Shown: positions 1,160-47,344 of the stretch, one piece after another
How the letters are laid out: each line of letters begins with the position of its first letter
Position numbering within the stretch: position 1 is the first letter of the stretch
Source of the DNA: Octopus bimaculoides
Lineage: Eukaryota
Direction of reading: 5' to 3'
Length of the DNA stretch: 48,493 bases
NCBI RefSeq assembly: GCF_001194135.2
Contig: NC_069008.1
Location: 17,471,750 to 17,520,242, forward strand
Translations under genes and position numbers: made by a program
Notes under the pieces: model-generated
The model's input: only the letters and a program-made list of their open reading frames with translations
What the model was told of the DNA's origin: nothing
Databases searched by the model: none

Positions 1160-1858
1160 TTCTTTATTGCCCACACGGGGCTAAACATAGAGGGTACAAA
1201 CAAGGACAGCCAAAGGGATTAAGTCAATTACATCGACCCCAGTGTGTAACTGGTACTTATTCAATCGACCCCTCCCCCCCAAAGGATAAATCAGAACGTA
1301 ATGGCAGATGAAATACCACTAAGCATTTCACCCGGTGTGCTAACGATTCTGCCAGCTCCCCNNNNNNNNNNNNNNNNNNNNNNNNNNNNNNNNNNNNNNN
1401 NNNNNNNNNNNNNNNNNNNNNNNNNNNNNNNNNNNNNNNNNNNNNNNNNNNNNNNNNNNNNNNNNNNNNNNNNNNNNNNNNNNNNNNNNNNNNNNNNNNN
1501 NNNNNNNNNNNNNNNNNNNNNNNNNNNNNNNNNNNNNNNNNNNNNNNNNNNNNNNNNNNNNNNNNNNNNNNNNNNNNNNNNNNNNNNNNNNNNNNNNNNN
1601 NNNNNNNNNNNNNNNNNNNNNNNNNNNNNNNNNNNNNNNNNNNNNNNNNNNNNNNNNNNNNNNNNNNNNNNNNNNNNNNNNNNNNNNNNNNNNNNNNNNN
1701 NNNNNNNNNNNNNNNNNNNNNNNNNNNNNNNNNNNNNNNNNNNNNNNNNNNNNNNNNNNNNNNNNNNNNNNNNNNNNNNNNNNNNNNNNNNNNNNNNNNN
1801 NNNNNNNNNNNNNNNNNNNNNNNNNNNNNNNNNNNNNNNNNNNNNNNNNNNNNNNNNN

Positions 1859-4620: not shown

Positions 4621-6064
4621 TTAACGTGTATGTGACCGAGTACTCCACAGACACACGTGTACCCTTAATGTAGTTCTCATGGAGATTCAGTTTGACACGG
4701 AATGTGACAAGGCTGGTCCTTTTTGAAATGCAGGTTCTATTCATTTCTGCCAGACGAAGAGACCCGAGCAACGTGAAGTAACTGACGCATAAGACACGAA
4801 AAGGTAAAGATGAGTTTTATGGTATCTGATATGTTGAAGGATGCTTGTGAATTTGGAACTGCTTATGCTGTTCAATATTTCAATATTGCTGTTTTGTGAA
4901 ATCTCAGACGAACCCCTTGAAATGTCCAATGCATTTTCCAAAGTTCGCTCTGAACGCCCTTGCTTGTTTTCTGATTTTTAGTTCGTCCTCATTTCTGAGA
5001 AATCCAAAGAAGCAGAATAGCTGATGGGAAGCAACTCTTAGAGAAATTTCGTTTTGGGATTTGGTTTGCAAGATTCTTTATGTGAGTTCGTGTGTTGAAG
5101 CATATTCTGTTGTGTCTGGGGAGAGTCATTCTCTCTTTTGGTGCCTTGTAATTTAACAGACTCACCGGTAAAATTTCTACTTATTTATTTTTTATTTTTC
5201 TAAAATTTTCGTTGTGTCTTGCAACCTTTTCAATAGTTGTTGACTCTTTCCGTTACACACGCTGTGTTCCTTTTTGTTTGTTTGTGCACATGTGTGTGTG
5301 TGTACCTCTACATCCATGCATGTGTGTGCGTAAATACTTACTATTAAAGGGAGGCGACTGAAGGAAGACCTACTGGGACATCACGGTTTTATGAACCAAC
5401 GACCAAATTGAAGAATCTCAGATCAGCATCGATAGAAGATGGCAAAGGGGATTATGTTTGGCAACGGCAGAACTGTTCTGGTGTTTTACGCTGATGGCAA
5501 TAGTAAAGGAGTGGTTGGGTGGGTAGGAAGGTTACATCCCGACCATGGAATTTCGAGTTTGGGGCACTGGGGGGGCATGTGTCTGCATCTAGTAGTGGGG
5601 CCTTGGTACAGGGGTTCCAGGGTTTGGAAACACCTCTTAACCACTACTGTTCCCCAGTCTACTCCGAACCCAGAATAGCAGTCCCTGTTAGGGTCCCGGA
5701 CATGGGTTAAGTAACATGTGAATCACATGGAAATAAAGACCTCCCCTAATTCTCATTACAACTTACTGATCTCTGATTGTCTCAACCGTTTTTTGGTGCC
5801 ATTGGTTCTTATAGCTGATTGTACCGAAAATTGGGTTCACTGGTAAGCAACACTTTATCCACTCAAAACAATTCCATTCACAGGAATTTCTCAGACTCTC
5901 AGAACATTTCCATGGAAACCATGTTCGTATGCACTATTTGTGAGGTTTATAGTGTTTTGATAGTAATTCAATGATCATGCTGCGTTTGGGTTGTTTTGAG
6001 AGTGGTACCATATTGGCCCTAGTACATATAGTGGTGACTGTTTCATACACAAGTAAAAAAATAA

Positions 6065-10700: not shown

Positions 10701-12658
10701 TACCACAAGTCACCATAAAGATCACTGAGAGAGAAAGAGAGAGAGAGAGAGAATGATTGTTGATCATCTTACCTTTTATGGACACATCCAGCTTGATATC
10801 AAAGTTATAGTTGTCTGGATGGCTGAGGTGGGGTAATGCTGGTGGGTCCTGTCAAAATAGCATTTATACGTCTATACAATCATCTGCTGGTTCATTTGCT
10901 CGTTATACATTAATTAGTTAAAGATATGGAGCTGATATAATATGTCTTGGAACTTATTGCAAAGCATCATAATAAACATTTTTTTGTCTTCCCATTCAGG
11001 GGAATCAGTACAGTTTCTTTTTTTTTGTATCTAACCTCTTTCTTTCTCTCTCTCTCTCTCTCTTTCTACTGATTGTTTTCAACCATCACCAACGCCACCA
11101 CCATCGCCACCGCAACTGCCATACACACACCATTCAGACTTCTGACGCCACCACCATCAACAACGCCTTCCCCTCCACCACCATCACTTACTATCACTGT
11201 CATGCTTGACTGCCTCAGCTACCACCACCACCACCATCACCTCCGCCTCTATCACAACTACAGCTCATACTATTACAATGACCCCATTACCATTTCAAAT
11301 GTCAATATACTACAGCCTTCACCATGCCTACTATTACTCTCACCCCAGCAAGAGGAATAGTAGAAGTGTTATTGAATAGTGAGAGAGCGGGGTTCAAAGT
11401 GTGACACACTGACACACAGAAATTCGTTTTGGCATTTATTATTATAGATGGTTTAAAATTATACAAAAAGTCGAAAACAGAAGACAGAGGCAGGAGAGGA
11501 AAAGGTGTAGTAGTCTGATGCTGAGAAAAAATAGAAGTCTTAGACATTTCTAACCAGAATGAGAAAAAACAGATGGAGAGAAGATAATGTCTGGATTAAC
11601 AGTTGCACGTGTGTGTGTGTGTACTTTGCAGAGAAACTCATTTAACAAAATGGAACAATATCTTACCTGAGGCAGATTGTCTGTGACAAAAGGTTTGAGG
11701 GCTTCCATAGTGACCACCCAAGGAGAAATACTGGTGCCGATGCTTTTAGCAAGGAACGGTCCAAGAGGAACATATTCCCACTTTTGAATGTCACGAGCTG
11801 TAAATAACCCAAAGAAAAGAAAACAAATAAAGAAATGAATCATGGCTGCCTCCCAACCACATGGTTCAGGGTTCAGTCCCACTGCGTGGCACCTTGGGCA
11901 AGTGTCTTCTACTATAGCCTTGGGCTGACCAAAACCTTGTGAATAGATTTGGTAGACGGAAACTGAAAGAAGCCTGTCATGTATATATGTGTGCTTGTGT
12001 GTGTGTCACCAACATCACTGCTTGATAACCGGTGTTGGTGTGTTTACGTCCCCATAGCTAAGTGGCCGACCAAAGCCTTGTGAGTGGATTTGGTAGACGG
12101 AAACTGGAAGNNNNNNNNNNTGTCACCAACATCACTGCTTGATAACCGGTGTTGGTGTGTTTACGTCCCCATAGCTAAGTGGCCGACCAAAGCCTTGTGA
12201 GTGGATTTGGTAGACGGAAACTGGAAGAAGCCCATCGTATATGTATGTGTATGTGTGTGTTTGTGTGTCTGTGTTTGTCCTCCCACCATCGCTTGACAAC
12301 CGATGCTGGTGTGTTTACGTCCCCGTAACTTAGTGGTTCGGCAAAAGAGGCCAATAGAATAAGTACTAGGCTTACAAAAAATAAGCTCTCGGGTTGATTT
12401 GCTCGACTAAAGGTGGTGCTCCAGCATGGCTGCAGTCAAATGACTGAAACAAGTAAATAAATAAGTATATATATATATATATATAAAAATATATATATAT
12501 ATATATGTGAATAAGTAAATGATAGGTTTGCCTCAATCCTCCAGGGGTAGTCTGAAGCATCCAAGCAACCAGGGGATACATAACCTCCACATAATAAAAC
12601 AATGGCTAACTAGCCCAACAGAATTGCTTCTTCTTGTATTTGTTGCTCCATTCTCCAC

Positions 12659-12695
<37 letters not shown>

Positions 12696-13927
12696 TACTT
12701 TATTTAAAAGCAGGAGAAATATAACAAAAAAACCGTTACTCTGAGTTTCACGTTCCCGTTCATCGGACAGTTTTGTTGCACATTTCATGTGCTTACTCCG
12801 GTATATACATACATGTATATATATAATACGTGTGGATATATGATGCAAATATGTATAATATACATACATTATAAACAAAATCTCAGATGCTAAGGGGTCA
12901 TTCAACAACTGCAGGAACCACACACAAATGCAAAGAGATTCCCTTACTTAATCTGGATACACCAAGAACTCTTTTTTTGCCCAAATTCCTCCAATCTCAA
13001 ATTCCAACAAAAATCAAAAAGCGAATGAAGTCCACACAGGTACGACCATCAACATACAGCAGCATCCATGAAGTCTCATTTCTACTTACCGCTCCAATCA
13101 TTCATGACAACCATTCCAAAGATATGATCCTCTGCCTTCCCCATGGGGATGCTGGTGCCAAGGTTGTTGGACGCACCTCCCACGAAGAAAGCCATCTCGA
13201 GCTCAATGTCCATGAGGCGGCAAGGGCCAAAAACAGGGGGTTTGCCTGGAAGCAAAACAAACAAGTATACAGTTTAGCTCTCTCTCTCCGTCACTCTCAG
13301 GGTTCACAAAAGGTGTAATTATGCTTTGTAGCTTTGCTTCTCTCTCAATATCTATACACCTGTTTCTTTGTCTTTTGCTTTTTCCTGTAAATTTCAACTA
13401 TATATATATATTTAAGAATTTAAGGAATGGAGAAAACGCATGTTATAATTGCATACTTTATTCCTACATGTTTCAAAGGATTACAACCTGTGTGATCCAT
13501 AGGGATCTTTGATATTAAAATTGTAACCTTCTCATCAGGGAAAGCATGGGAATCATCTTAAACGTAAGAAATACACATAATTATATATATATATATATAT
13601 ATAACAGTAGAAGAATGTTATTTTCTCGGATGAGTCATCCTTTACCTTATTTCTAATGTGCCATTAGATAACGTAGTCCTAGATACACTATGGCTGAATA
13701 AAAGACAAGATGGCTGCAAACTGAAGCGCCTTTGATCACAGGTCTGTTGGATCAAGGCTGACCTGGGGCTTTTAATAACAACAAGTGAATACAATATACT
13801 TACTTTCATCAGCTCTTGTTTGTCCATTTGGTCTGCGCACAGGTGTGCCAGAGATTATAACTGATGAGGCTCTGCCATGGTAACCAACAGGTAGGTAAGT
13901 CCTGTAAAATAATTGACAAAAGAAACC

Positions 13928-14236: not shown

Positions 14237-17200
14237 GGTAAGGTGACAAGTTAGCAGAATCGTTAACACGTTGGGCAAAATGCTTAGCAGTATTTTGCTC
14301 ATTGCTATGTTCTGAGTTCAAATTCTGCTGAGGTTAACTTTGTATTTCATCCTTTTGAGAGTCAATAGCACCTTGCTGAACACGATGCACTCAATACTCA
14401 CCAGTTTGGCATCAAGGCATTCTCAGGGCCCCTAAACATGCATCCAACATTGTAGGCATGGTTCTTAGATGAGTAGAAGTCAGTATAGTCACCTGCAAAA
14501 CATAATGAGCATTATGATAATTACAATGATTATAATGATGATGATGATAATAATTAAAGCAGCTCAGCCCCACCCAATCACCCACCCACCCATGTATTTT
14601 CTAAAAGAAAACCGCCCATGCTGGTGCTACATGAAAGTGCTTGTGTCACTGTTATGTAAAGAGCACCGAAGTTAGTGCCACGTAATAAGCACTTGTGCCA
14701 GTGCCACTTGCAGAATGCACCTGTGTTGGTGCCATGTGAAAGTCACATAAAAGGGGAGACATCTAGGGGATGTCTTTCAGTGTGGACACGACCACCTTGT
14801 CTCTTTCAATAAAGTAAACACATCGGCACTGAATATATATTGGCTCTTAAAGTCCAGTTGAAAACTCTCTAAGATGGAGAGAGAGAGAGAGAGAGAAAAA
14901 AAGAAAAAGAGGGAGAAAGAAAGAGAGAAAGTAAGAAAGAAAGAAAGAAAGACAGTGGTAGGAAGGAAGACACACAGACAGACAAACAGAGAAGCAAAGA
15001 AACAGTTAAAGCGCCGTTACCGATTCTGGCAGGAAGATGCATTTTCGCTTTATTCTGAGGAACAAAGGCTCTGCAAAACAACAAAAAACAAAAACAAATC
15101 ATTATGGAATAATTAAGAAGAATCTCTTCAAATTTCGTCTTTTATTTGGCCATGCTGGGGCACAGCCTTGAAGAATTTTAGCCAAAGAAATCGACCCCAG
15201 TACTTCTGTTTTTTTTTTTGAAGCCTGGTACTTATTCTATCAGACTCTTTTACCAAACTGCTTAGTCACGGAGTCGCAAATACACCAGCACAGATTATTA
15301 AGTAGTGGTGGGGGACAAACACACACACACAAGTGACAACTTGACAGTGAAAACAGAGGGAGCACTGTGCAACTGATGTGTGTTTCTTTAGCTGAAAAAA
15401 ACGTAAAGCTATAGAGGTGAAACTTACTTCTGCCTGAGCCCCACATCGTCCTTTAAAGTTGCTTCCGACGCTGATAGCATTTTCTGCAGGGTCGCTCTCG
15501 CTTCGCACCATGCTGCACGGGTCATGCCCATGAAGGCGTTTAGAGTTTCCTGAAATCATAAAACAAGGAAAGCTGCAGAACGAGACAAATATATAGACAA
15601 AACTTCAAAAACAAACCTATGTTTGTTTACAACCATAACTTAGCGGTTCGGCAAAAGAGACCGATAGAATAAGTACTAGGCATCCAAGGAATAAGTCCTG
15701 GGGTCAATTTGCTCGACTAAAAGGCGGTGCTCCAGCATGGCCACAATCAAATAACTGAAATGAGTAAAAGAGAGAGTATATGACACCTAGCATTCCTGGA
15801 TGACTTTATAACTTCTAAAAATTGCAGAAGAATTTGTCGGTCGGCAGTTTAGCTTAAAGGTAGAGCACTCTAACCGGATACTAGAGGGGTGTGAGTTCAA
15901 TCGTCATGGCTGGTTGCTGACAAATTTTCCTGCTCTAAAAGGATTTTATCCTATATACGATGTTCTGTCAACATTTATGCATTGAAAAATATATCCTTCT
16001 ACTTGTTCCACAATATATTTCAATACTTCAAAGACAAACTTATGTTGGTTCAAATCATCATCATCGTTTAACGTCCACTTTCCAGGCTAGCATGGGTTGG
16101 ACGATTTGACTGAGGACTGGCAAGCCAGAAGGCTGCACCAGGCTCCATGACATTATTTATAGACAGATAGATATACTAGTTTCAAATTTTGGCACAAGGC
16201 CTGCAATTTCAAGCAGTGGTAGTGATTAAGTTGATTACAACTCAATTGGTACTATTCTATATTTTTCAAGGTAATATAGATCCGAAGAGCCAGCCTTTTA
16301 TACCTGCATTCGTTTGTACAAGTGTATTCTGTTATAATTAACTAACTGGCACTCCGTTGCTTACGAGAATGAGGGTTCCAGTTGATTTGATCAACGGAAC
16401 AGCCTGCTCGTGAATTTAACTTGCAAGTGGCTGAGCACTCCACAGACATGTGTACCCTTAACGTAGTTCTCGGGGATATTCAGCGTGACACAGTGTGACA
16501 AGGCTGGCCCCTTTGAATTACAGGTACAACAGAAACAGGAAGAAAGAGTGAGAGAAAGTTTGTGGTGAAAGAGTACAGCAGGGTTTGCCACCGACCCCTG
16601 GCCCCTGCTGGAGCCTCGTGAGCAAAGTTTGATAAGTAAAATAAACAAGGAGGAAATGTGGTGAAGGGGGTTAAGTTTGTTGTGGAACAATCTGTTGGAC
16701 GGTGCCGTCTGTATACTTTANNNNNNNNNNNNNNNNNNNNNNNNNNNNNNNNNNNNNNNNNNNNNNNNNNNNNNNNNNNNNNNNNNNNNNNNNNNNNNNN
16801 NNNNNNNNNNNNNNNNNNNNNNNNNNNNNNNNNNNNNNNNNNNNNNNNNNNNNNNNNNNNNNNNNNNNNNNNNNNNNNNNNNNNNNNNNNNNNNNNNNNN
16901 NNNNNNNNNNNNNNNNNNTCTGGTCACCAATGGCAACACCAATTCTATGGCGAGGCTGCAAAGAGTACAAAAAAAAACAATAACAACAATAATAATAATA
17001 ATCCTTTCTGTTATAGGCACAAGGACTGAAATTTGTGGGGAGTGAAATTTGTCTGGTCTGGGAATCGAAACTGCAATCTTACGACCGCAAGTCCGCTGCC
17101 CTAACCCCTGGGCTATTGCATCTCCACACACACACACACACACACACACACTATGGGCTTCTTTCAGTTTCCATCTACCAAATCCACTCACAAGGCTTTG

Positions 17201-17493: not shown

Positions 17494-20400
17494 CTTTGTA
17501 ATCAGTTATAGTTTGAGTAAACTTGCACCTGGAAGAAACTTCGCACTTCAAAGTCCCTGACGACAAAATTAAAATAACTATATGCACAACCACGCACGCA
17601 TACGTCTATTTGGATGCATGTGCATGTGTGTGCATGTTGTCAGGGGGGTGGGGGAGTGGTTTGTGGTGGTCAGAGATATACAGGTGGTTAAAGAAACAGC
17701 GCCATCCCGTCCATGACTACCCCTCCTTTACGTGATAAAGCAAAGACGTGGGAGCGAGACAGCTTGATCAGAAAACCACTGAAAGCTAAACACGGGAGAT
17801 AGACATTATCCTATTATCATCCTGCCACCACCACCATTACTACCACCACCACCACTACGACTGCTACTACTACCACTACTACCACTACCACCAACACTAC
17901 TGCTACTACTACCACTACCACCAACACTACTGCTACTACTACCACCACTACTGCTACTATGACCACCACAACTACCACCACTGCTACTACTATTACTACC
18001 GCCACCACTACTACTGCCAACATCATCAGCTCCCCAACAACCACTACAACTACCANNNNNNNNNNNNNNNNNNNNNNNNNNNNNNNNNNNNNNNNNNNNN
18101 NNNNNNNNNNNNNNNNNNNNNNNNNNNNNNNNNNNNNNNNNNNNNNNNNNNNNNNNNNNNNNNNNNNNNNNNNNNNNNNNNNNNNNNNNNNNNNNNNNNN
18201 NNNNNNNNNNNNNNNNNNNNNNNNNNNNNNNNNNNNNNNNNNNNNNNNNNNNNNNNNNNNNNNNNNNNNNNNNNNNNNNNNNNNNNNNNNNNNNNNNNNN
18301 NNNNNNNNNNNNNNNNNNNNNNNNNNNNNNNNNNNNNNNNNNNNNNNNNNNNNNNNNNNNNNNNNNNNNNNNNNNNNNNNNNNNNNNNNNNNNNNNNNNN
18401 NNNNNNNNNNNNNNNTATGACCACCACAACTACCACCACTGCTACTACTATTACTACCGCCACCACTACTACTGCCAACATCATCAGCTCCCCAACAACC
18501 ACTACAACTACCACCACCACCACCACCAATGTCATCAATCATCACCACCACCACCACCACTACGACTGCTACTACTACCACTACTATGACCACCACCACT
18601 ACCACCACTGCTACTACCATTACTACCACTACCACCACTACCACTACCACCCCCACCTCTCACTGCTTGACACCCACCCAGGTCAAAATGAACTTCTGCT
18701 CCAAAGAGTAAATCCAGAATCTAACAGGGAGCGGGGGTGGGGTGGGGGTTCAGGTGCAACACAGGTAAACAAACAATTATATTTGAAGACCCAAGGTAGA
18801 AAGACTTTGGTGAGATCATCCAATAGCAGCCACAAAATCATACATACACATATATGTGTATGTATGTATATATATACACACACACACATATATATCTATA
18901 TATATATATACACACACACAACCACACAACCACACGCTCACAGATTTTGTTTTCAATTTATTCTCCACAAAAGTTGTTTACAAAAACAAAATCCAAAACA
19001 CATCAAATCAAGGTCAAGGAGGTCAAAAACACTCCAACCATACCCACCCCTACAGATCCCCCCTGCACTGACAACTCCTCCGCCTCCCCCCATCTGTTGT
19101 GTCAATCTGTGCTTTGAGGCTATCAACAAACAAAAGTTAATAAATTCAAAAACTGAAAGGTTATCTTTGCCGTGTATGTATGTGTGTATATATGTGTGTA
19201 TATATGTGTGTGTGCATGTATGTGTATATATGTATATATATGAATGTGTGGACATATATGTATGTGTGCATGGATATATATGTATCTGTATGTATTTGTG
19301 CATGTGTGTCTGTGTGTGAATGTATTTATATGTGTATGTATGTGTATGTACATATGCATGTATATGCGTATGTATGCATATGTGTGTGTGTGTGTGTGTG
19401 GTGTTAGGCCACTGAGAATAAAGAACAGAAAGAGGCCCCAAGAGTGTGTGTGTGTGTATCTGTGTTAAATTCCATTCCAGCCATGACCATCCCATCTACT
19501 TAACAGTGTCTCTAATTACATTAACCATTATACCTTTTTCTTTTCCAACGACAATAAGCCTTCACATATACAGCCAACAAAGAAAAAAAAGAGATTTAAC
19601 TGCTATTTCTAACACGTTGAACGACCACATAGAAGCCAGCCCAGGTCACCAGCAGGTCACCACTAGATGTCAGCTCTCACCCTCATCACACAGAGAGCGC
19701 AAATGTATCTAATGCATGCTAGACATCCATCATGTGAGGCAAGTCGGCCTGACTTTTTAGCTGTCAACCATTTGAGCTGTGACACACTAACTCACAACCA
19801 AACCAGCCCCTTTTGTCATACAGACTCCCTTGCTCCTACCCTCCTTTGCTATGTGTGAGGCTCGAAAAAGGGGACAGATAAATTGCCAGGTATAAAACAA
19901 TAGGATTATAAAACTGTTTAACCTTTTTCTTATGGTATTTCTTCTGAAATACGCTGCTTTTTTGTTTCAAATAATTTTGAAAATAACAAAGAATTTAGTA
20001 AAATAACTTCGTTATCATTCATCTAGTGTTAGGAACATAAATTGTGACTAAGGTTTGGTGGAAGATTTCAATTGAGAACTTATGAAAACAAGACATTTGT
20101 ACTACAGAGCCAGAAGTGGTTTCAGCCGGGTTGATAACAAAAGGGTTAAACACAATTCTACATTTGGGCAGATGCACATTAGAAGCAGTTGGAAGGGTGT
20201 GGATAGAAGGAAATTTAGGCTATTATTTCTAGCATATAGAATGACCACATTGAGGTCTCCTTCTCTCATGTCTTCTGCTGATTATTTTTCTTCTTAACCC
20301 TTTCGTTACCCTATTTCTGTTGAGATACTCTGTTTCTTTCAATTGATTTTAAATATAACAAAGAGTTTAATAAAATAACTTCGTTATCATTCAGCTAGTG

Positions 20401-27174: not shown

Positions 27175-39964
<12,790 letters not shown>

Positions 39965-42714: not shown

Positions 42715-43789
42715 CAAGGTAAGTCTACATTAATTCACATATTTGTTTCCTTGTGATTTACTTGCATTTACTTCACATTGTTTTGGCCTTACCCAGGATC
42801 TTTTATACGATATATATATATATATGTGTGTGTGTTCGGTGCAAGCATGGTTGTGTGGTAAGAAGTTTGCTTCCCAACCACATGGTTCTGGGTTCAGTCC
42901 CACTGCGTGGCACCTTGGGCAAGTGTCTTCTACTATAGCCTCGGGCAAACCAAAGCCTTGTGATTGGATTTGGTAGACGGAAACTGAAAGAAGCCCGTCG
43001 TGTGTGTGCGTGTGTGTATGTATGTATGTATGTATGTATGTATGAATGAATGAATGATCAATAAGTATCCGGACTATAAGTTCTGAGTTCAAATTCCACT
43101 TTGGTTGACTTTGCCTTTCATCCTTTCAGGGTCAATAAATTTAGTACCAGTGAAACACTGGGGGTTGATGTAATCAACTAGCCCTTTCTCCAAAATTTCA
43201 GGTCTTGTATCTTTAGTAGTAGAAAGGATTATTATTATTATTACAAAGTGTCCAGTTCACACTGTGAAGTGGTTGGTGACTGGAAGAGCATCCAGCTGTA
43301 AAAACCCTGCCAAAACTGACCTCACCTGTGCTGGTGCCATGTAAAAAGCACCGAGTCCACTCTGTAGGTTGGTTGGTGTTAGGAAGGGCATCCGGCAGCC
43401 GTAAAAACCATGCTGAAACAGACCCAGAGGTGTGCTGCAGTCTTCTGCCTGGTCAGCTTCTGTCGAACTGTCCAACCCATGCCAGCATGGAAGGTAGACA
43501 TTAAATGATGATGATGATGATGGTGATTTAAGCATCAGACAAAACCTAGAGACACATTTACACAATCCTGTATACAGGCACACACACATATATCAACACA
43601 TATATGTACGCACACCATTCAAACATACCCACACACACATAAACACAAACATACAAAGACACATGCACACACACACACACTTCTATGTACAACATGCTCG
43701 GACAAGAATCAATGAGGGTCAGTCTGCAAGAAATAGCAGCCAAATCTCCCTGAAAACCACTCTAATGCCTTAAAAAAAAGAAGGAAACA

Positions 43790-44376
43790 GCACATGATAT
43801 AGTCGTAGATATACCCCTAAAACGATGGAATGGTCAAGGCTGGAGTGTCTTTGATCAAAGCTCTGTTGGATTTGGGCTGATCCAGGACTAAATAACCAGG
43901 ATGATCACAGCTGGAACATCTCTGATCATAGGCCTACTGGATCAGGACTGACCTGGGGCTAAACAACAGCAACAGGGGAGAACACATCAGATAATGTAGT
44001 CCTAGACACACTTATATCTGAATAAATGATGGGGTGGTCATAACTGGAATGTCTCTGATCATAACCCCCTTGGATTTTGGCTGACTTGGGGTTAAACAAC
44101 ATCAACAAGGATGGATACATTGGATAATGTAGTCCTAGATGCACTATGTCTGAATAAAAGATGGGGTGGTCATGCCTGGAACACCTTTAATCATAGGTCT
44201 ATCTGAGTCAGGATTCACCAGGGCTAAACAATAATAACTACAGGGAAGGGCACATTGTATAATGTAGTCCAAGATATGCTATGCCAGGACTAAGAAAAGG
44301 CTGGTCACAACTGGATTGATTCTGATTACAGGTGGTCTGCTGGATCTAGACTGACCCAGGGCTAAATGGCCACAAC
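43790..44376 (-). repeat. Tandem array, ~5 family F units, inverted
   Basis: Reverse complement of the 32211 unit, each ending GGGGCTAAACAACAAC; single unit at 13660-13780. Confidence 0.8.
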
Positions 44377-44767: not shown

Positions 44768-45995
44768 GTGTGTGTAGGTTTAGGAATGGCTGTGTGGTAA
44801 GTAGCTTGCTTACCAACTACATGGTTCCAGGTTCATTTCCACTGCGTGGCATCTTGGGCAAGTGTCTTCTACTATAGCCTCGGGCCGACCAAAGCCTTGT
44901 GAGTGGATTTGGTAGACGGAAACTGACAGAAGCCCGTCGTATATATATATATATATATATACACACACATAACAAAGAATTTAGTAAAATAACTTCATTA
45001 AACTAGTGTTAAATTGTGACCAAGGTTTGGTGGAAGATTTTAATTCAAAATTTTTGAAAATAAGACATTTGTACTACACAGCCAGAGCCGGTTTCAGCCA
45101 GGTTGGTATCAAAGAGGTTAGGGTTAGAGAAGCACTTCAGTAGACTTCCATCAAATTCTGGAAGGTGCACTATCATATTCTGCACCTTCCAGGGTTGGAC
45201 GATCTGACTGAGGACTGGTGAAACCGGATGGCAACACCAGGCTCCAATCTAATTTGGCAGAGTTTCTACAGCTGGATGCCCTTCCTAACGCCAACCACTC
45301 AGAGAGTGTAGTGGGTGCTTTTACGTGTCACCCGCACGAAAACGGCCACGCTCGAAATGGTGTCTTTTATGTGCCACCCGCACAAGAGCCAGTCCAGGGG
45401 CACCGGCAACGATCTCGCTCGATGAATATATATATATAAAATATACAAGAATAAGGGCAGGGAATCGTCAATTAATAATAGAATTAATAATTAACAATTT
45501 TGCTAAGTAGTTCAGTATGAAAAAACCTTTATCGGTAAAACCATTTATCATCATAAATATACAGGNNNNNNNNNNNNNNNNNNNNNNNNNNNNNNNNNNN
45601 NNNNNNNNNNNNNNNNNNNNNNNNNNNNNNNNNNNNNNNNNNNNNNNNNNNNNNNNNNNNNNNNNNNNNNNNNNNNNNNNNNNNNNNNNNNNNNNNNNNN
45701 NNNNNNNNNNNNNNNNNNNNNNNNNNNNNNNNNNNNNNNNNNNNNNNNNNNNNNNNNNNNNNNNNNNNNNNNNNNNNNNNNNNNNNNNNNNNNNNNNNNN
45801 NNNNNNNNNNNNNNNNNNNNNNNNNNNNNNNNNNNNNNNNNNNNNNNNNNNNNNNNNNNNNNNNNNNNNNNNNNNNNNNNNNNNNNNNNNNNNNNNNNNN
45901 NNNNNNNNNNNNNNNNNNNNNNNNNNNNNNNNNNNNNNNNNNNNNNNNNNNNNNNNNNNNNNNNNNNNNNNNNNNNNNNNNNNNNNNNNNNNNNN

Positions 45996-46290: not shown

Positions 46291-47344
46291 GTTAATATAT
46301 ATACGTGTGTGTATATATATATATATATTTATATATATATAATATATACATACATATATATATAATATATACATATATATATAATATATACATACATATA
46401 TATATNNNNNNNNNNNNNNNNNNNNNNNNNNNNNNNNNNNNNNNNNNNNNNNNNNNNNNNNNNNNNNNNNNNNNNNNNNNNNNNNNNNNNNNNNNNNNNN
46501 NNNNNNNNNNNNNNNNNNNNNNNNNNNNNNNNNNNNNNNNNNNNNNNNNNNNNNNNNNNNNNNNNNNNNNNNNNNNNNNNNNNNNNNNNNNNNNNNNNNN
46601 NNNNNNNNNNNNNNNNNNNNNNNNNNNNNNNNNNNNNNNNNNNNNNNNNNNNNNNNNNNNNNNNNNNNNNNNNNNNNNNNNNNNNNNNNNNNNNNNNNNN
46701 NNNNNNNNNNNNNNNNNNNNNNNNNNNNNNNNNNNNNNNNNNNNNNNNNNNNNNNNNNNNNNNNNNNNNNNNNNNNNNNNNNNNNNNNNNNNNNNNNNNN
46801 NNNNNNNNNNNNNNNNNNNNNNNNNNNNNNNNNNNNNNNNNNNNNNNNNNNNNNNNNNNNNNNNNNNNNNNNNNNNNNNNNNNNNNNNNNNNNNNNNNNN
46901 NNNNNNNNNNNNNNNNNNNNNNNNNNNNNNNNNNNNNNNNNNNNNNNNNNNNNNNNNNNNNNNNNNNNNNNNNNNNNNNNNNNNNNNNNNNNNNNNNNNN
47001 NNNNNNNNNNNNNNNNNNNNNNNNNNNNNNNNNNNNNNNNNNNNNNNNNNNNNNNNNNNNNNNNNNNNNNNNNNNNNNNNNNNNNNNNNNNNNNNNNNNN
47101 NNNNNNNNNNNNNNNNNNNNNNNNNNNNNNNNNNNNNNNNNNNNNNNNNNNNNNNNNNNNNNNNNNNNNNNNNNNNNNNNNNNNNNNNNNNNNNNNNNNN
47201 NNNNNNNNNNNNNNNNNNNNNNNNNNNNNNNNNNNNNNNNNNNNNNNNNNNNNNNNNNNNNNNNNNNNNNNNNNNNNNNNNNNNNNNNNNNNNNNNNNNN
47301 NNNNNNNNNNNNNNNNNNNNNNNNNNNNNNNNNNNNNNNNNNNN

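What the first reader, a model, noticed from the sequence alone, without database searches (positions are those of the whole stretch)
13461..13542. Intact-core hammerhead ribozyme in FAH intron 6, on the transcribed strand
Seen, minus strand: stem I UUCC/GGAA; core CUGAUGA; long stem II (GAAGG-UUACAA / UUGUAA-U-CCUUU, with an inner GAUCC/GGAUC hairpin); GAA; palindromic stem III ACAUGU; cleavage triplet GUA (predicted cut between 13465 and 13464); then AAUAAA at 13462-13457. Known: Penelope-like elements carry minimal type I hammerheads with palindromic stem III that cleave as dimers. Inference: a PLE-derived ribozyme is transcribed as part of every FAH pre-mRNA and might cut it.
Basis: partly seen in the sequence, partly recalled or inferred. 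Interest (0 to 1): 0.8.

Follow-up and report, generated by a model that had tools for sequence, protein, structure and literature searches.

The report
Lone hammerhead-like motif, octopus FAH intron
A short sequence with the signature of a minimal hammerhead ribozyme does sit in an intron of the octopus FAH gene, but it is a single copy found in only one species, most likely transposon debris, and is not expected to cut the gene's RNA.

Summary
On the minus strand, 13542-13461 reads UUCC / CUGAUGA / 57-nt helix II / GAA / ACAUGU / A / GGAA. It lies in the sense strand of intron 6 (13803-13246) of a fumarylacetoacetase gene whose exons match Octopus bimaculoides.

A relaxed minimal-hammerhead descriptor is expected by chance 4e-4 times per window, about 26 times per 2.7-Gb genome. 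An observed-like descriptor is expected 1e-5 times per window.

The motif is not conserved. In O. vulgaris and O. sinensis the 171-nt segment that carries it is absent, and other insertions and microsatellites fill the site. In the window the segment is bracketed by (TA)n, a documented target of Penelope-like elements (PLEs).

It departs from published PLE minimal hammerheads in three ways: G.U instead of G10.1-C11.1, no extra base after A9, and a very long helix II. No partner copy lies within 48 kb, and no PLE ORF is nearby. The Rfam negative carries no weight, because Rfam also missed a genuine PLE hammerhead in my control.

Best reading (about 0.55): a relic of a 5'-truncated PLE-type insertion that is catalytically inert here. 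Chance resemblance is about 0.35. Functional cleavage of FAH pre-mRNA is about 0.04. Membership of an octopus repeat family could not be tested. Ordinary; low interest.

The parts
13539..13542 (-). Helix I, 5' strand (UUCC; positions 2.4-2.1)
   Evidence: Read directly. Four Watson-Crick pairs with GGAA at 13464-13461.
13532..13538 (-). Core box C3-A9 (CUGAUGA)
   Evidence: Exact match. This is one of 8 such heptamers in the window, against 7.3 expected by chance, so the box alone means nothing.
13475..13531 (-). Helix II domain, 57 nt: GAAGG-UUACAA(UU) pairs with (GG)UUGUAA-U-CCUUU, with an inner hairpin GAUCC-CUAU-GGAUC. The closing pair 10.1/11.1 is G.U.
   Evidence: Folds as drawn at -13.2 kcal/mol. 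The closing pairs have probability 0.87-0.96 in the whole-intron ensemble. The domain is far longer than the 6-8 bp compact helix II of PLE minimal hammerheads (PMC4209133; the control has an 18-nt domain).
13472..13474 (-). Core G12 A13 A14 (GAA)
   Evidence: Read directly.
13466..13471 (-). Helix III: A15.1-U16.1 closing the palindromic CAUG. The hexamer ACAUGU is self-complementary.
   Evidence: Read directly. As a monomer it forms only 1 bp. It could form 6 bp with a second copy (double-hammerhead model).
13465..13465 (-). A17; predicted scissile bond between 13465 and 13464 (triplet GUA)
   Evidence: Follows from hammerhead numbering. Cleavage was not tested.
13461..13464 (-). Helix I, 3' strand (GGAA; positions 1.1-1.4)
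   Evidence: Read directly. The pairing probability of helix I in the intron ensemble is below 0.1.
13411..13581 (-). 171-nt single-copy segment that carries the motif. It is absent from the orthologous intron of O. vulgaris and O. sinensis and is the putative inserted element fragment.
   Evidence: There is no blastn match in L001 or L003, although both flanks align at 86-93%. The sequences of the other species are shown. The window holds no other copy, and the segment has no terminal inverted repeats.
13582..13603 (.). (TA)11 microsatellite on the upstream (gene-sense) side of the segment
13399..13410 (.). (TA)6 microsatellite on the downstream side of the segment
   Evidence: (TA)n is a reported preferred target of PLE insertion (PMC8557442).
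13246..13803 (-). FAH intron 6 (558 nt, GT..AG, phase 1)
   Evidence: The exon ends were read against the tblastn alignments. The exon numbering comes from O. vulgaris.
13804..13900 (-). FAH coding exon 6
   Evidence: tblastn.
13085..13245 (-). FAH coding exon 7
   Evidence: tblastn.

Best explanation
The motif is a relic of a mobile element and is not a working part of the FAH gene. A fragment of about 171 nt (13581-13411) landed in a (TA)n microsatellite inside FAH intron 6 in the lineage leading to O. bimaculoides. It is most likely the 3' end of a 5'-truncated Penelope-like element (PLE), or of a non-autonomous element that PLEs mobilise.

The fragment carries a minimal type-I hammerhead motif with a one-pair helix III closed by a palindromic loop. 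In the parent element such motifs are thought to pair with a second copy, forming a double hammerhead with a 6-bp helix III, so as to process tandem element transcripts.

Here the motif is transcribed passively as part of the FAH intron. It is expected to be catalytically silent for four reasons: it has no partner copy; its helix I is only 4 bp; its 10.1/11.1 pair is G.U; and the RNA is predicted to sit in a closed hairpin that buries the CUGAUG box.

Shown: the anatomy, the intron and strand, absence from sister species, the (TA)n bracketing, single-copy status within reach, and the chance rates. Inferred: PLE origin, insertion polarity and catalytic inactivity.
For: 1. All hammerhead core positions, A15.1-U16.1, H17 and the palindromic loop 3 are present. 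The chance expectation is 4e-4 per window for the relaxed descriptor and 1e-5 for the observed-like one.

2. Helix I of 4 bp, a larger-than-usual helix II and a palindromic 15.2-16.2/loop 3 are published traits of PLE minimal hammerheads. Most such motifs occur as single, dispersed copies 'probably related to truncated PLEs' (PMC4209133).

3. The carrying segment is missing from O. vulgaris and O. sinensis while both flanks align. It is bracketed by (TA)11 and (TA)6. PLEs show an insertion bias for microsatellites, (TA)n included, and carry their hammerhead near the 3' end (PMC8557442). My Patiria control has it in the 3' UTR, about 265 nt after the ORF.

4. PLEs are abundant and recently active in Octopus (PMC13282606).

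5. The one core-adjacent defect, U at 11.1, sits at a CpG (C11.1pG12) in a region with CpG o/e 0.47 and TpG o/e 1.29. It is therefore the likeliest single mutation of a canonical G10.1-C11.1 pair.

6. The hammerhead-compatible fold takes about 0.14% of the predicted ensemble. A bona fide PLE hammerhead gives about 0.11%, so the closed-hairpin tendency is a family trait and does not count against the motif.

7. For inactivity: a single minimal hammerhead showed no detectable cleavage, and dimers cleaved only weakly, in PMC4209133. Eight of nine Xenopus dimers did not cleave in bioRxiv 10.64898/2026.07.22.740005.
Against: No PLE reverse-transcriptase or GIY-YIG coding remnant lies in the window or in the orthologous loci.

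No second copy of the segment or of the motif was found in the window, L001, L002 or L003, about 135 kb in all. Family membership is therefore untested.

Three published hallmarks are not met: the G10.1-C11.1 pair, the unpaired base between A9 and 10.1, and a compact 6-8 bp helix II (PMC4209133; control).

If the insertion postdates the split from O. vulgaris, little decay is expected. The odd 57-nt helix II would then have to be a trait of an as yet unseen source family.

Insertion polarity is not proven. The other two species carry different insertions at the same microsatellite, and the Argonauta intron cannot be aligned.
Confidence: 0.55

Rival explanations
1. Chance resemblance. The 97-nt stretch 13548-13452 is simply an imperfect inverted repeat, a long hairpin, in lineage-specific intronic sequence of some other origin. 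In such a hairpin helices I and II come for free, and CUGAUGA happens to face GAAACAUGUA in an internal loop.
For: The MFE structure is one long hairpin in which CCUGAUG pairs with CAU-GUAGG and CAUGCUUU pairs with AAAGUAUG, both in isolation and in the whole intron. The fold z-score is only -1.5.

The relaxed descriptor is expected about 26 times per 2.7-Gb genome by chance, and the first-stage screen looked at an unknown number of windows. PMC4209133 itself reports unclassifiable descriptor hits that were discarded.

Three family hallmarks are missing: G10.1-C11.1, the 9/10.1 bulge and a compact helix II. No family copies or PLE ORF were seen.
Against: The observed-like combination (4 Watson-Crick pairs in helix I, >=5 closing pairs in helix II, a 4-nt palindrome) is expected only about 0.6 times per genome, or about 0.1 with >=10 bp in helix II.

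A real PLE hammerhead has the same closed-hairpin MFE behaviour, so that feature does not discriminate.

The (TA)n bracketing and the lineage-specific presence point to a mobile-element insertion of the class that carries such motifs.
Confidence: 0.35
2. Functional intronic ribozyme. The motif cleaves FAH pre-mRNA, either in trans-dimers between nascent transcripts or with help from chaperones, and so modulates FAH expression.
For: The motif is on the sense strand, so it is part of every pre-mRNA. The core boxes are intact.

There is precedent: conserved intronic type-I hammerheads occur in the amniote RECK, CTCL and DTNB genes (PMC6155905).
Against: It is not conserved even in the sister species O. 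vulgaris and O. sinensis, whereas the amniote precedents are defined by conservation.

No second copy lies within 48 kb for dimer formation. The double-hammerhead dimer is predicted at -36.6 kcal/mol, against -47.8 for two closed monomers.

G.U at 10.1/11.1 replaces a highly conserved pair. Helix I pairing probability is below 0.1. Minimal hammerheads are inactive as monomers in vitro (PMC4209133).
Confidence: 0.04
3. A lineage-specific hairpin RNA gene, for example an intronic pre-miRNA, or a foldback element unrelated to hammerheads.
For: The region is a long imperfect hairpin and lies in an intron.
Against: Rfam gives no miRNA or other family match at the motif. The only weak hits nearby are chance-level and fall on the TA repeat or upstream.

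Stability is low for a 97-nt hairpin (-23.9 kcal/mol, z = -1.5). The terminal region is a branched 29 nt. The hairpin is absent from the sister species.
Confidence: 0.03

Closest known systems
Minimal hammerhead ribozymes (min-HHRs) of Penelope-like retroelements (Cervera & de la Pena 2014, PMC4209133; dimer cleavage: Lunse, Weinberg & Breaker, RNA Biol, as cited in PMC6765202)
   Same: Type-I topology, with CUGAUGA and GAAA boxes. Short helix I (4 bp), enlarged helix II, and helix III reduced to A15.1-U16.1 plus a palindromic loop, so that two copies could build a 6-bp helix III. It occurs as a dispersed single motif, which is the commonest genomic state reported. It sits at a (TA)n microsatellite.
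   Different: G.U instead of the highly conserved G10.1-C11.1. No unpaired base between A9 and 10.1. The helix II domain is 57 nt with an inner hairpin, against about 18 nt in the Patiria control. No PLE ORF, pseudo-LTR or second copy is nearby. No family of related copies could be demonstrated.
Conserved intronic type-I hammerheads of amniotes (RECK, CTCL and DTNB introns; Rfam Hammerhead_HH9 / HH10; reviewed in PMC6155905)
   Same: A type-I hammerhead motif on the sense strand of an intron of a protein-coding gene, thought to derive from retroelement hammerheads.
   Different: Those are canonical hammerheads with loop-loop tertiary contacts, and they are conserved across whole vertebrate classes. 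This one is minimal, is not detected by the Rfam models, and is absent from the orthologous intron of two congeneric species.
Animal non-LTR retrozymes: tandem repeats of 170-400 nt with type-I hammerheads, expressed as circRNAs (PMC7229834; bioRxiv 10.64898/2026.07.22.740005)
   Same: The size of the carrying segment (171 nt) is in the monomer range. 'Solo' monomers exist, and about 44% of Xenopus copies overlap introns. Retrozymes are related to the pseudo-LTRs of PLEs.
   Different: No tandem arrangement here. The hammerhead lacks the canonical helix I and II loops. No related copies were seen. Rfam Hammerhead_1, which reported 235 hits in the giant squid genome (PMC6962438), does not match here.

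Membership tests
Hammerhead ribozyme (general definition) | Conserved core C3 U4 G5 A6 N7 G8 A9 ... G12 A13 A14, with A15.1-U16.1 and H17 | tested here: met
   CUGAUGA is at 13538-32, GAA at 13474-72, A15.1 at 13471, U16.1 at 13466 and A17 at 13465.
Hammerhead ribozyme (general definition) | Three helices around the core | tested here: inconclusive
   Helix I has 4 bp and helix II has 5+6(+2) bp. Helix III is a single pair as a monomer and needs a second copy. The hammerhead-compatible fold is -16.0 kcal/mol against an MFE of -23.9, but a real PLE hammerhead behaves the same way.
Hammerhead ribozyme (general definition) | G10.1-C11.1 closing pair of helix II | tested here: not met
   The pair is G13531.U13475. 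The U lies at a former-CpG-type position, and the region has CpG o/e 0.47, so decay from C is plausible but unproven.
Hammerhead ribozyme (general definition) | Site-specific self-cleavage | not testable with these tools
   This needs in vitro transcription or RNA end mapping.
Hammerhead ribozyme (general definition) | Match to Rfam hammerhead covariance models (Hammerhead_1, _3, _II, HH9, HH10) | tested here: not met
   No hit at gathering score on the window, nor at E<=10 on 13350-13650. The control limits the weight of this: the same search at E<=1 also misses two textbook PLE minimal hammerheads in L004. The test therefore has no power for this subclass.
PLE minimal hammerhead (Cervera & de la Pena 2014) | Short helix I (4-5 bp) and palindromic 15.2-16.2 / loop 3 | tested here: met
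   UUCC/GGAA for helix I, and the self-complementary ACAUGU for helix III.
PLE minimal hammerhead (Cervera & de la Pena 2014) | Unpaired nucleotide between A9 and 10.1 | tested here: not met
   The best register has no bulge. The bulged register leaves only 4 closing pairs with A10.1-U11.1.
PLE minimal hammerhead (Cervera & de la Pena 2014) | Compact helix II of about 6-8 bp | tested here: not met
   The helix II domain is 57 nt with a bulge, an internal loop and an inner hairpin. The Patiria control has 6 bp plus a 6-nt loop.
PLE minimal hammerhead (Cervera & de la Pena 2014) | Lies in the pseudo-LTR / 3' region of an element encoding RT + GIY-YIG, or belongs to a genome-wide consensus family with covariation | not testable with these tools
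   No PLE coding remnant is present in the window or in L001-L003. The octopus genomes could not be searched by DNA. No octopus PLE protein appeared among the 120 listed hits of the probe search.
PLE minimal hammerhead (Cervera & de la Pena 2014) | Second copy in tandem or nearby (<50 kb) to allow the dimer | tested here: not met
   A relaxed scan (CUGANGA or UUGANAA core, any palindromic or hairpin helix III) finds only this motif in the 48.5-kb window, and none in L001-L003.
Conserved intronic hammerheads (HH9/HH10 type) | Conservation in the orthologous intron across species | tested here: not met
   The motif is absent from O. vulgaris L001 and O. sinensis L003, although the flanks align. 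The Argonauta intron is unrelated microsatellite.
Animal non-LTR retrozyme | Head-to-tail tandem repeats, each with a type-I hammerhead | tested here: not met
   The segment is single-copy. The tandem repeat next to it (126-nt unit) carries no hammerhead box.

The most novel reading that the evidence does not exclude
This would be a young, species-specific hammerhead with an unusually long, structured helix II that is nevertheless active in vivo. It would act through pairing of two nascent FAH transcripts or with protein help, and so trim FAH pre-mRNA levels in O. bimaculoides. That would be a ribozyme caught at the start of domestication in an intron.
Probability: 0.04. Interest if true: 0.6.

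Novelty: new member of a known kind. Interest (0 to 1): 0.17.

Why it matters
If the best reading holds, this is one more dispersed, decaying minimal hammerhead of the kind already counted in thousands per metazoan genome. Its position in an intron is unremarkable: about 44% of Xenopus retrozyme copies overlap introns.

Three things are useful. It is a clean example of a lineage-specific insertion at a (TA)n hot spot where the sister species took different insertions. It warns that the Rfam hammerhead models do not see PLE-type minimal hammerheads. It points to a possible long-helix-II hammerhead family in octopus that a genome-wide search could confirm or dismiss in minutes.

It would matter more only if cleavage of FAH pre-mRNA were shown, and nothing here suggests that.

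Tried and rejected
Rfam at gathering score on the window, and at E<=10 on the locus, found no hammerhead. I do not count this as evidence against, because the same models miss genuine PLE hammerheads.

I first read the long-hairpin MFE and the 0.14% hammerhead-compatible ensemble fraction as evidence against a real hammerhead. I withdrew that after the Patiria control gave the same picture.

My first dimer model was a pseudoknot and could not be evaluated. I rebuilt it as a proper double hammerhead.

To find other copies I ran blastn of the intron and of the 94-nt motif against the window and L001-L003. Only TA-repeat hits and the 126-nt repeat came back.

To reach more octopus DNA I made an exact look-up of the 63-aa ORF overlapping the motif, which is not on record. 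The look-up of the O. bimaculoides UniRef FAH fragment also found nothing on record. A protein search with an octopus SINE-derived ORF returned no candidates. A recalled PLE RT/GIY-YIG probe hit thousands of real PLE proteins, but no octopus protein was among the 120 listed. The probe also found no PLE remnant in the loci held.

The supplements of PMC8557442 are not held. The Lunse et al. paper and the 2010 intronic-hammerhead paper are not held either.

A terminal-inverted-repeat (MITE) explanation for the 171-nt segment was rejected: the only inverted repeats are the TA runs. The AAUAAA was dismissed as meaningless, with 93 copies in the window. The weak Rfam hits MIR8041, snoZ5 and GlsR14 are chance-level and fall on the TA repeat or upstream.

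I did not scan the metagenome, viral or prokaryotic DNA collections, because they hold no octopus DNA.

Full report
**1. What is there**

On the minus strand, 13542-13461 reads:

UUCC | CUGAUGA | GAAGGUUACAAUUUUAAUAUCAAAGAUCCCUAUGGAUCACACAGGUUGUAAUCCUUU | GAA | ACAUGU | A | GGAA

AAUAAA overlaps the last bases.

In hammerhead numbering:
- The core C3-A9 and G12-A14, the A15.1-U16.1 pair and H17 (an A) are all present.
- Helix I has four Watson-Crick pairs.
- Helix II closes with G.U, A-U, A-U, G-C, G-C. After a bulged U it continues with six more pairs and two G.U pairs, and it ends in an internal loop and a small hairpin.
- Helix III is one pair around the palindromic CAUG.

**2. Where it is**

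A tblastn probe shows a fumarylacetoacetase (FAH) gene on the minus strand.
- The exons match the O. bimaculoides UniRef FAH fragments at 100% in clean exon alignments, against 87-100% for O. vulgaris and O. sinensis. The window is therefore O. bimaculoides or something very close to it.
- The motif lies in the 558-nt GT..AG intron 13803-13246, between coding exons 6 and 7. This numbering was confirmed on the gap-free O. vulgaris gene.
- It is on the transcribed strand.

**3. Is it more than chance?**

CUGAUGA alone is at chance frequency: 8 seen, 7.3 expected.

I wrote a minimal-hammerhead descriptor: helix I >=4 bp, helix II >=4 closing pairs, helix II domain <=80 nt, A + 2- or 4-nt palindrome + U, H17. 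It finds only this site in the window, and nothing in about 88 kb of orthologous DNA from O. vulgaris, O. sinensis and Argonauta.

Chance rates come from an order-3 Markov model of the window, with 16 million planted boxes, equivalent to about 31 genomes:

| Descriptor | Expected per window | Expected per 2.7-Gb genome |
|---|---|---|
| Relaxed | 4.3e-4 | about 26 |
| Observed-like (4 WC pairs in helix I, >=5 closing pairs in helix II, 4-nt palindrome) | 1e-5 | about 0.6 |
| Observed-like with >=10 bp in helix II | 2e-6 | about 0.1 |

The motif is thus unlikely to arise by chance in one given window. A screen of many windows or genomes will still turn up occasional chance hits, as the authors of the original descriptor also found (PMC4209133).

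**4. Database models and a control**

Rfam 15 gives no hammerhead hit at gathering score, nor at E<=10 in a 301-nt search.

To learn what that negative is worth, I fetched a real Penelope-like element (PLE).
- A recalled RT/GIY-YIG probe hit thousands of real PLE proteins.
- The Patiria miniata locus L004 carries two identical textbook minimal hammerheads: GUCUC CUGACGA U GACUAG-AGCAGG-CUAGUC GAAA CG U U|GAGAC.
- My scanner finds both. Rfam at E<=1 finds neither.

The Rfam negative therefore says nothing about this subclass.

The control also shows what a typical member looks like: a bulged base after A9, G10.1-C11.1, a 6-bp helix II with a 6-nt loop, a 5-bp helix I and a 2-nt palindrome. It lies in the 3' UTR, about 265 nt after the ORF.

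**5. Comparison with the published family**

Cervera & de la Pena (PMC4209133) list these traits of metazoan PLE minimal hammerheads:
- helix I of 4-5 bp;
- helix II larger than usual, at 6-8 bp;
- an unpaired base between 9 and 10.1;
- a highly conserved G10.1-C11.1 pair;
- palindromic 15.2-16.2 or loop 3.

They also note that most copies are dispersed single motifs, probably from truncated PLEs.

The candidate meets the helix I and palindrome criteria and occurs as a single dispersed copy. It fails three traits: it has G.U at 10.1/11.1, no 9/10.1 bulge, and a 57-nt rather than compact helix II.

The U at 11.1 is followed by G12, so a canonical C11.1 would have been a CpG. The window has CpG o/e 0.47 and TpG o/e 1.29. 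C-to-T at that spot is therefore the most likely single change. This is an inference and has not been demonstrated.

**6. Conservation and origin of the segment**

I fetched the orthologous FAH genes of O. vulgaris (L001), O. sinensis (L003) and Argonauta hians (L002).
- Exon 6, the start of the intron and the end of the intron align to the two Octopus species at 86-93%.
- Window 13604-13415 has no counterpart in either.
- At that position the window has (TA)11, 171 nt of unique sequence, then (TA)6.
- O. sinensis and O. vulgaris have 750-1000 nt of SINE-like sequence plus CT and TA microsatellites there, and no CUGAUGA on the sense strand.
- The Argonauta intron is an unrelated CAT-type microsatellite.

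The 171-nt segment has no terminal inverted repeats and no other copy in the window.

The simplest history is an old (TA)n microsatellite into which different elements inserted in different lineages. PLEs have a documented insertion bias for microsatellites, (TA)n included. They are usually 5'-truncated and carry their hammerhead near the 3' end (PMC8557442). PLEs are abundant and recently active in Octopus (PMC13282606).

This supports the relic reading, but it is circumstantial:
- No RT or endonuclease remnant is nearby.
- I could not search any octopus genome for sister copies.
- The routes I tried all failed.

**7. Would it cut?**

- As a monomer, helix III is a single pair.
- No second copy lies in the window to form the double hammerhead.
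- The predicted double-hammerhead dimer (-36.6 kcal/mol) is less stable than two closed monomers (-47.8).
- The monomer MFE is a long hairpin in which the CUGAUG box pairs with CAU-GUAGG. The hammerhead-compatible ensemble fraction is about 0.14%, and helix I pairs have probability below 0.1 in the whole-intron fold.

The genuine Patiria hammerhead shows the same closed fold and about 0.11%. This is therefore a family property and does not count against authenticity. It also agrees with the literature. Single minimal hammerheads show no detectable cleavage and dimers cleave only weakly (PMC4209133). Eight of nine Xenopus retrozyme dimers did not cleave in vitro (bioRxiv 10.64898/2026.07.22.740005).

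Taken together with the G.U at 10.1/11.1 and the absence from sister species, nothing supports a role in FAH expression.

From my own knowledge, not checked here: even efficient ribozymes placed in introns do not necessarily block splicing, which is the 'exon tethering' result of Dye, Gromak and Proudfoot (2006).

The AAUAAA is irrelevant. The hexamer occurs 93 times in the window.

**8. Verdict**

| Reading | Confidence |
|---|---|
| Inert relic of a PLE-type insertion | about 0.55 |
| Chance resemblance within an imperfect inverted repeat | about 0.35 |
| Functional intronic ribozyme | about 0.04 |
| Unrelated hairpin RNA | about 0.03 |

Dispersed minimal hammerheads number in the thousands in many animal genomes and are often intronic. 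Interest is therefore low, and the finding is at most a new member of a known kind.

Noticed in passing
window 13662-13778; 32212-32739; 30740-30979; 43840-44363; L001 16590-17104; L003 19780-20290: A tandem repeat with a unit of about 126 nt (GTTGTTGTTTAGCCCCAGGTCAATCCTGATCC...). The window's FAH intron 6 holds about one unit, but the same intron of O. vulgaris and O. sinensis holds 4-5 units. The window also has arrays at three other places. None of these arrays carries a hammerhead box.
   Followed up: partly
L003 20456-21205; L001 17271-18267: At the exact intron position where the window carries the hammerhead segment, O. sinensis and O. vulgaris carry two SINE-like pieces plus long CT and TA microsatellites. 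One piece looks tRNA-related on the reverse strand (...TGGAGGCGCAATGGCCCAGTGGTTAGGGCAG...). This microsatellite is a recurrent insertion hot spot.
   Followed up: partly
L004 2690-2735 (-) and 5347-5395 (+): The Patiria miniata PLE carries two identical minimal hammerheads in inverted orientation, about 265 nt after the RT ORF. The Rfam 15 hammerhead models miss both, even at E<=1. Rfam-based hammerhead counts in animal genomes therefore leave out this class.
   Followed up: yes
window 1362-1858, 16721-16918, 18056-18415, 27420-28341, 45566-45995, 46406-47344 and four shorter runs: Ten runs of N make up 7.2% of the window. The run at 16721-16918 removes part of FAH exon 2, which probably explains why the O. 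bimaculoides FAH models in UniRef are fragments of 349 and 294 aa.
   Followed up: partly
window, many sites (e.g. 5369-5761, 11805-11867, 31584-31955, 36489-36941, 42730-43092) and L001/L003: A very abundant octopus interspersed repeat translates as ...[42 protein letters not shown]... One copy abuts FAH exon 8 and is open in the exon's reading frame, so a tblastn hit to FAH runs on into it. No protein in the 5.8-billion-cluster collection shares words with it.
   Followed up: partly
whole window: AATAAA occurs 93 times, against 53 +/- 7 expected from dinucleotide shuffles. CpG o/e is 0.47 with a TpG/CpA excess, which points to CpG decay across this gene region.
   Followed up: no
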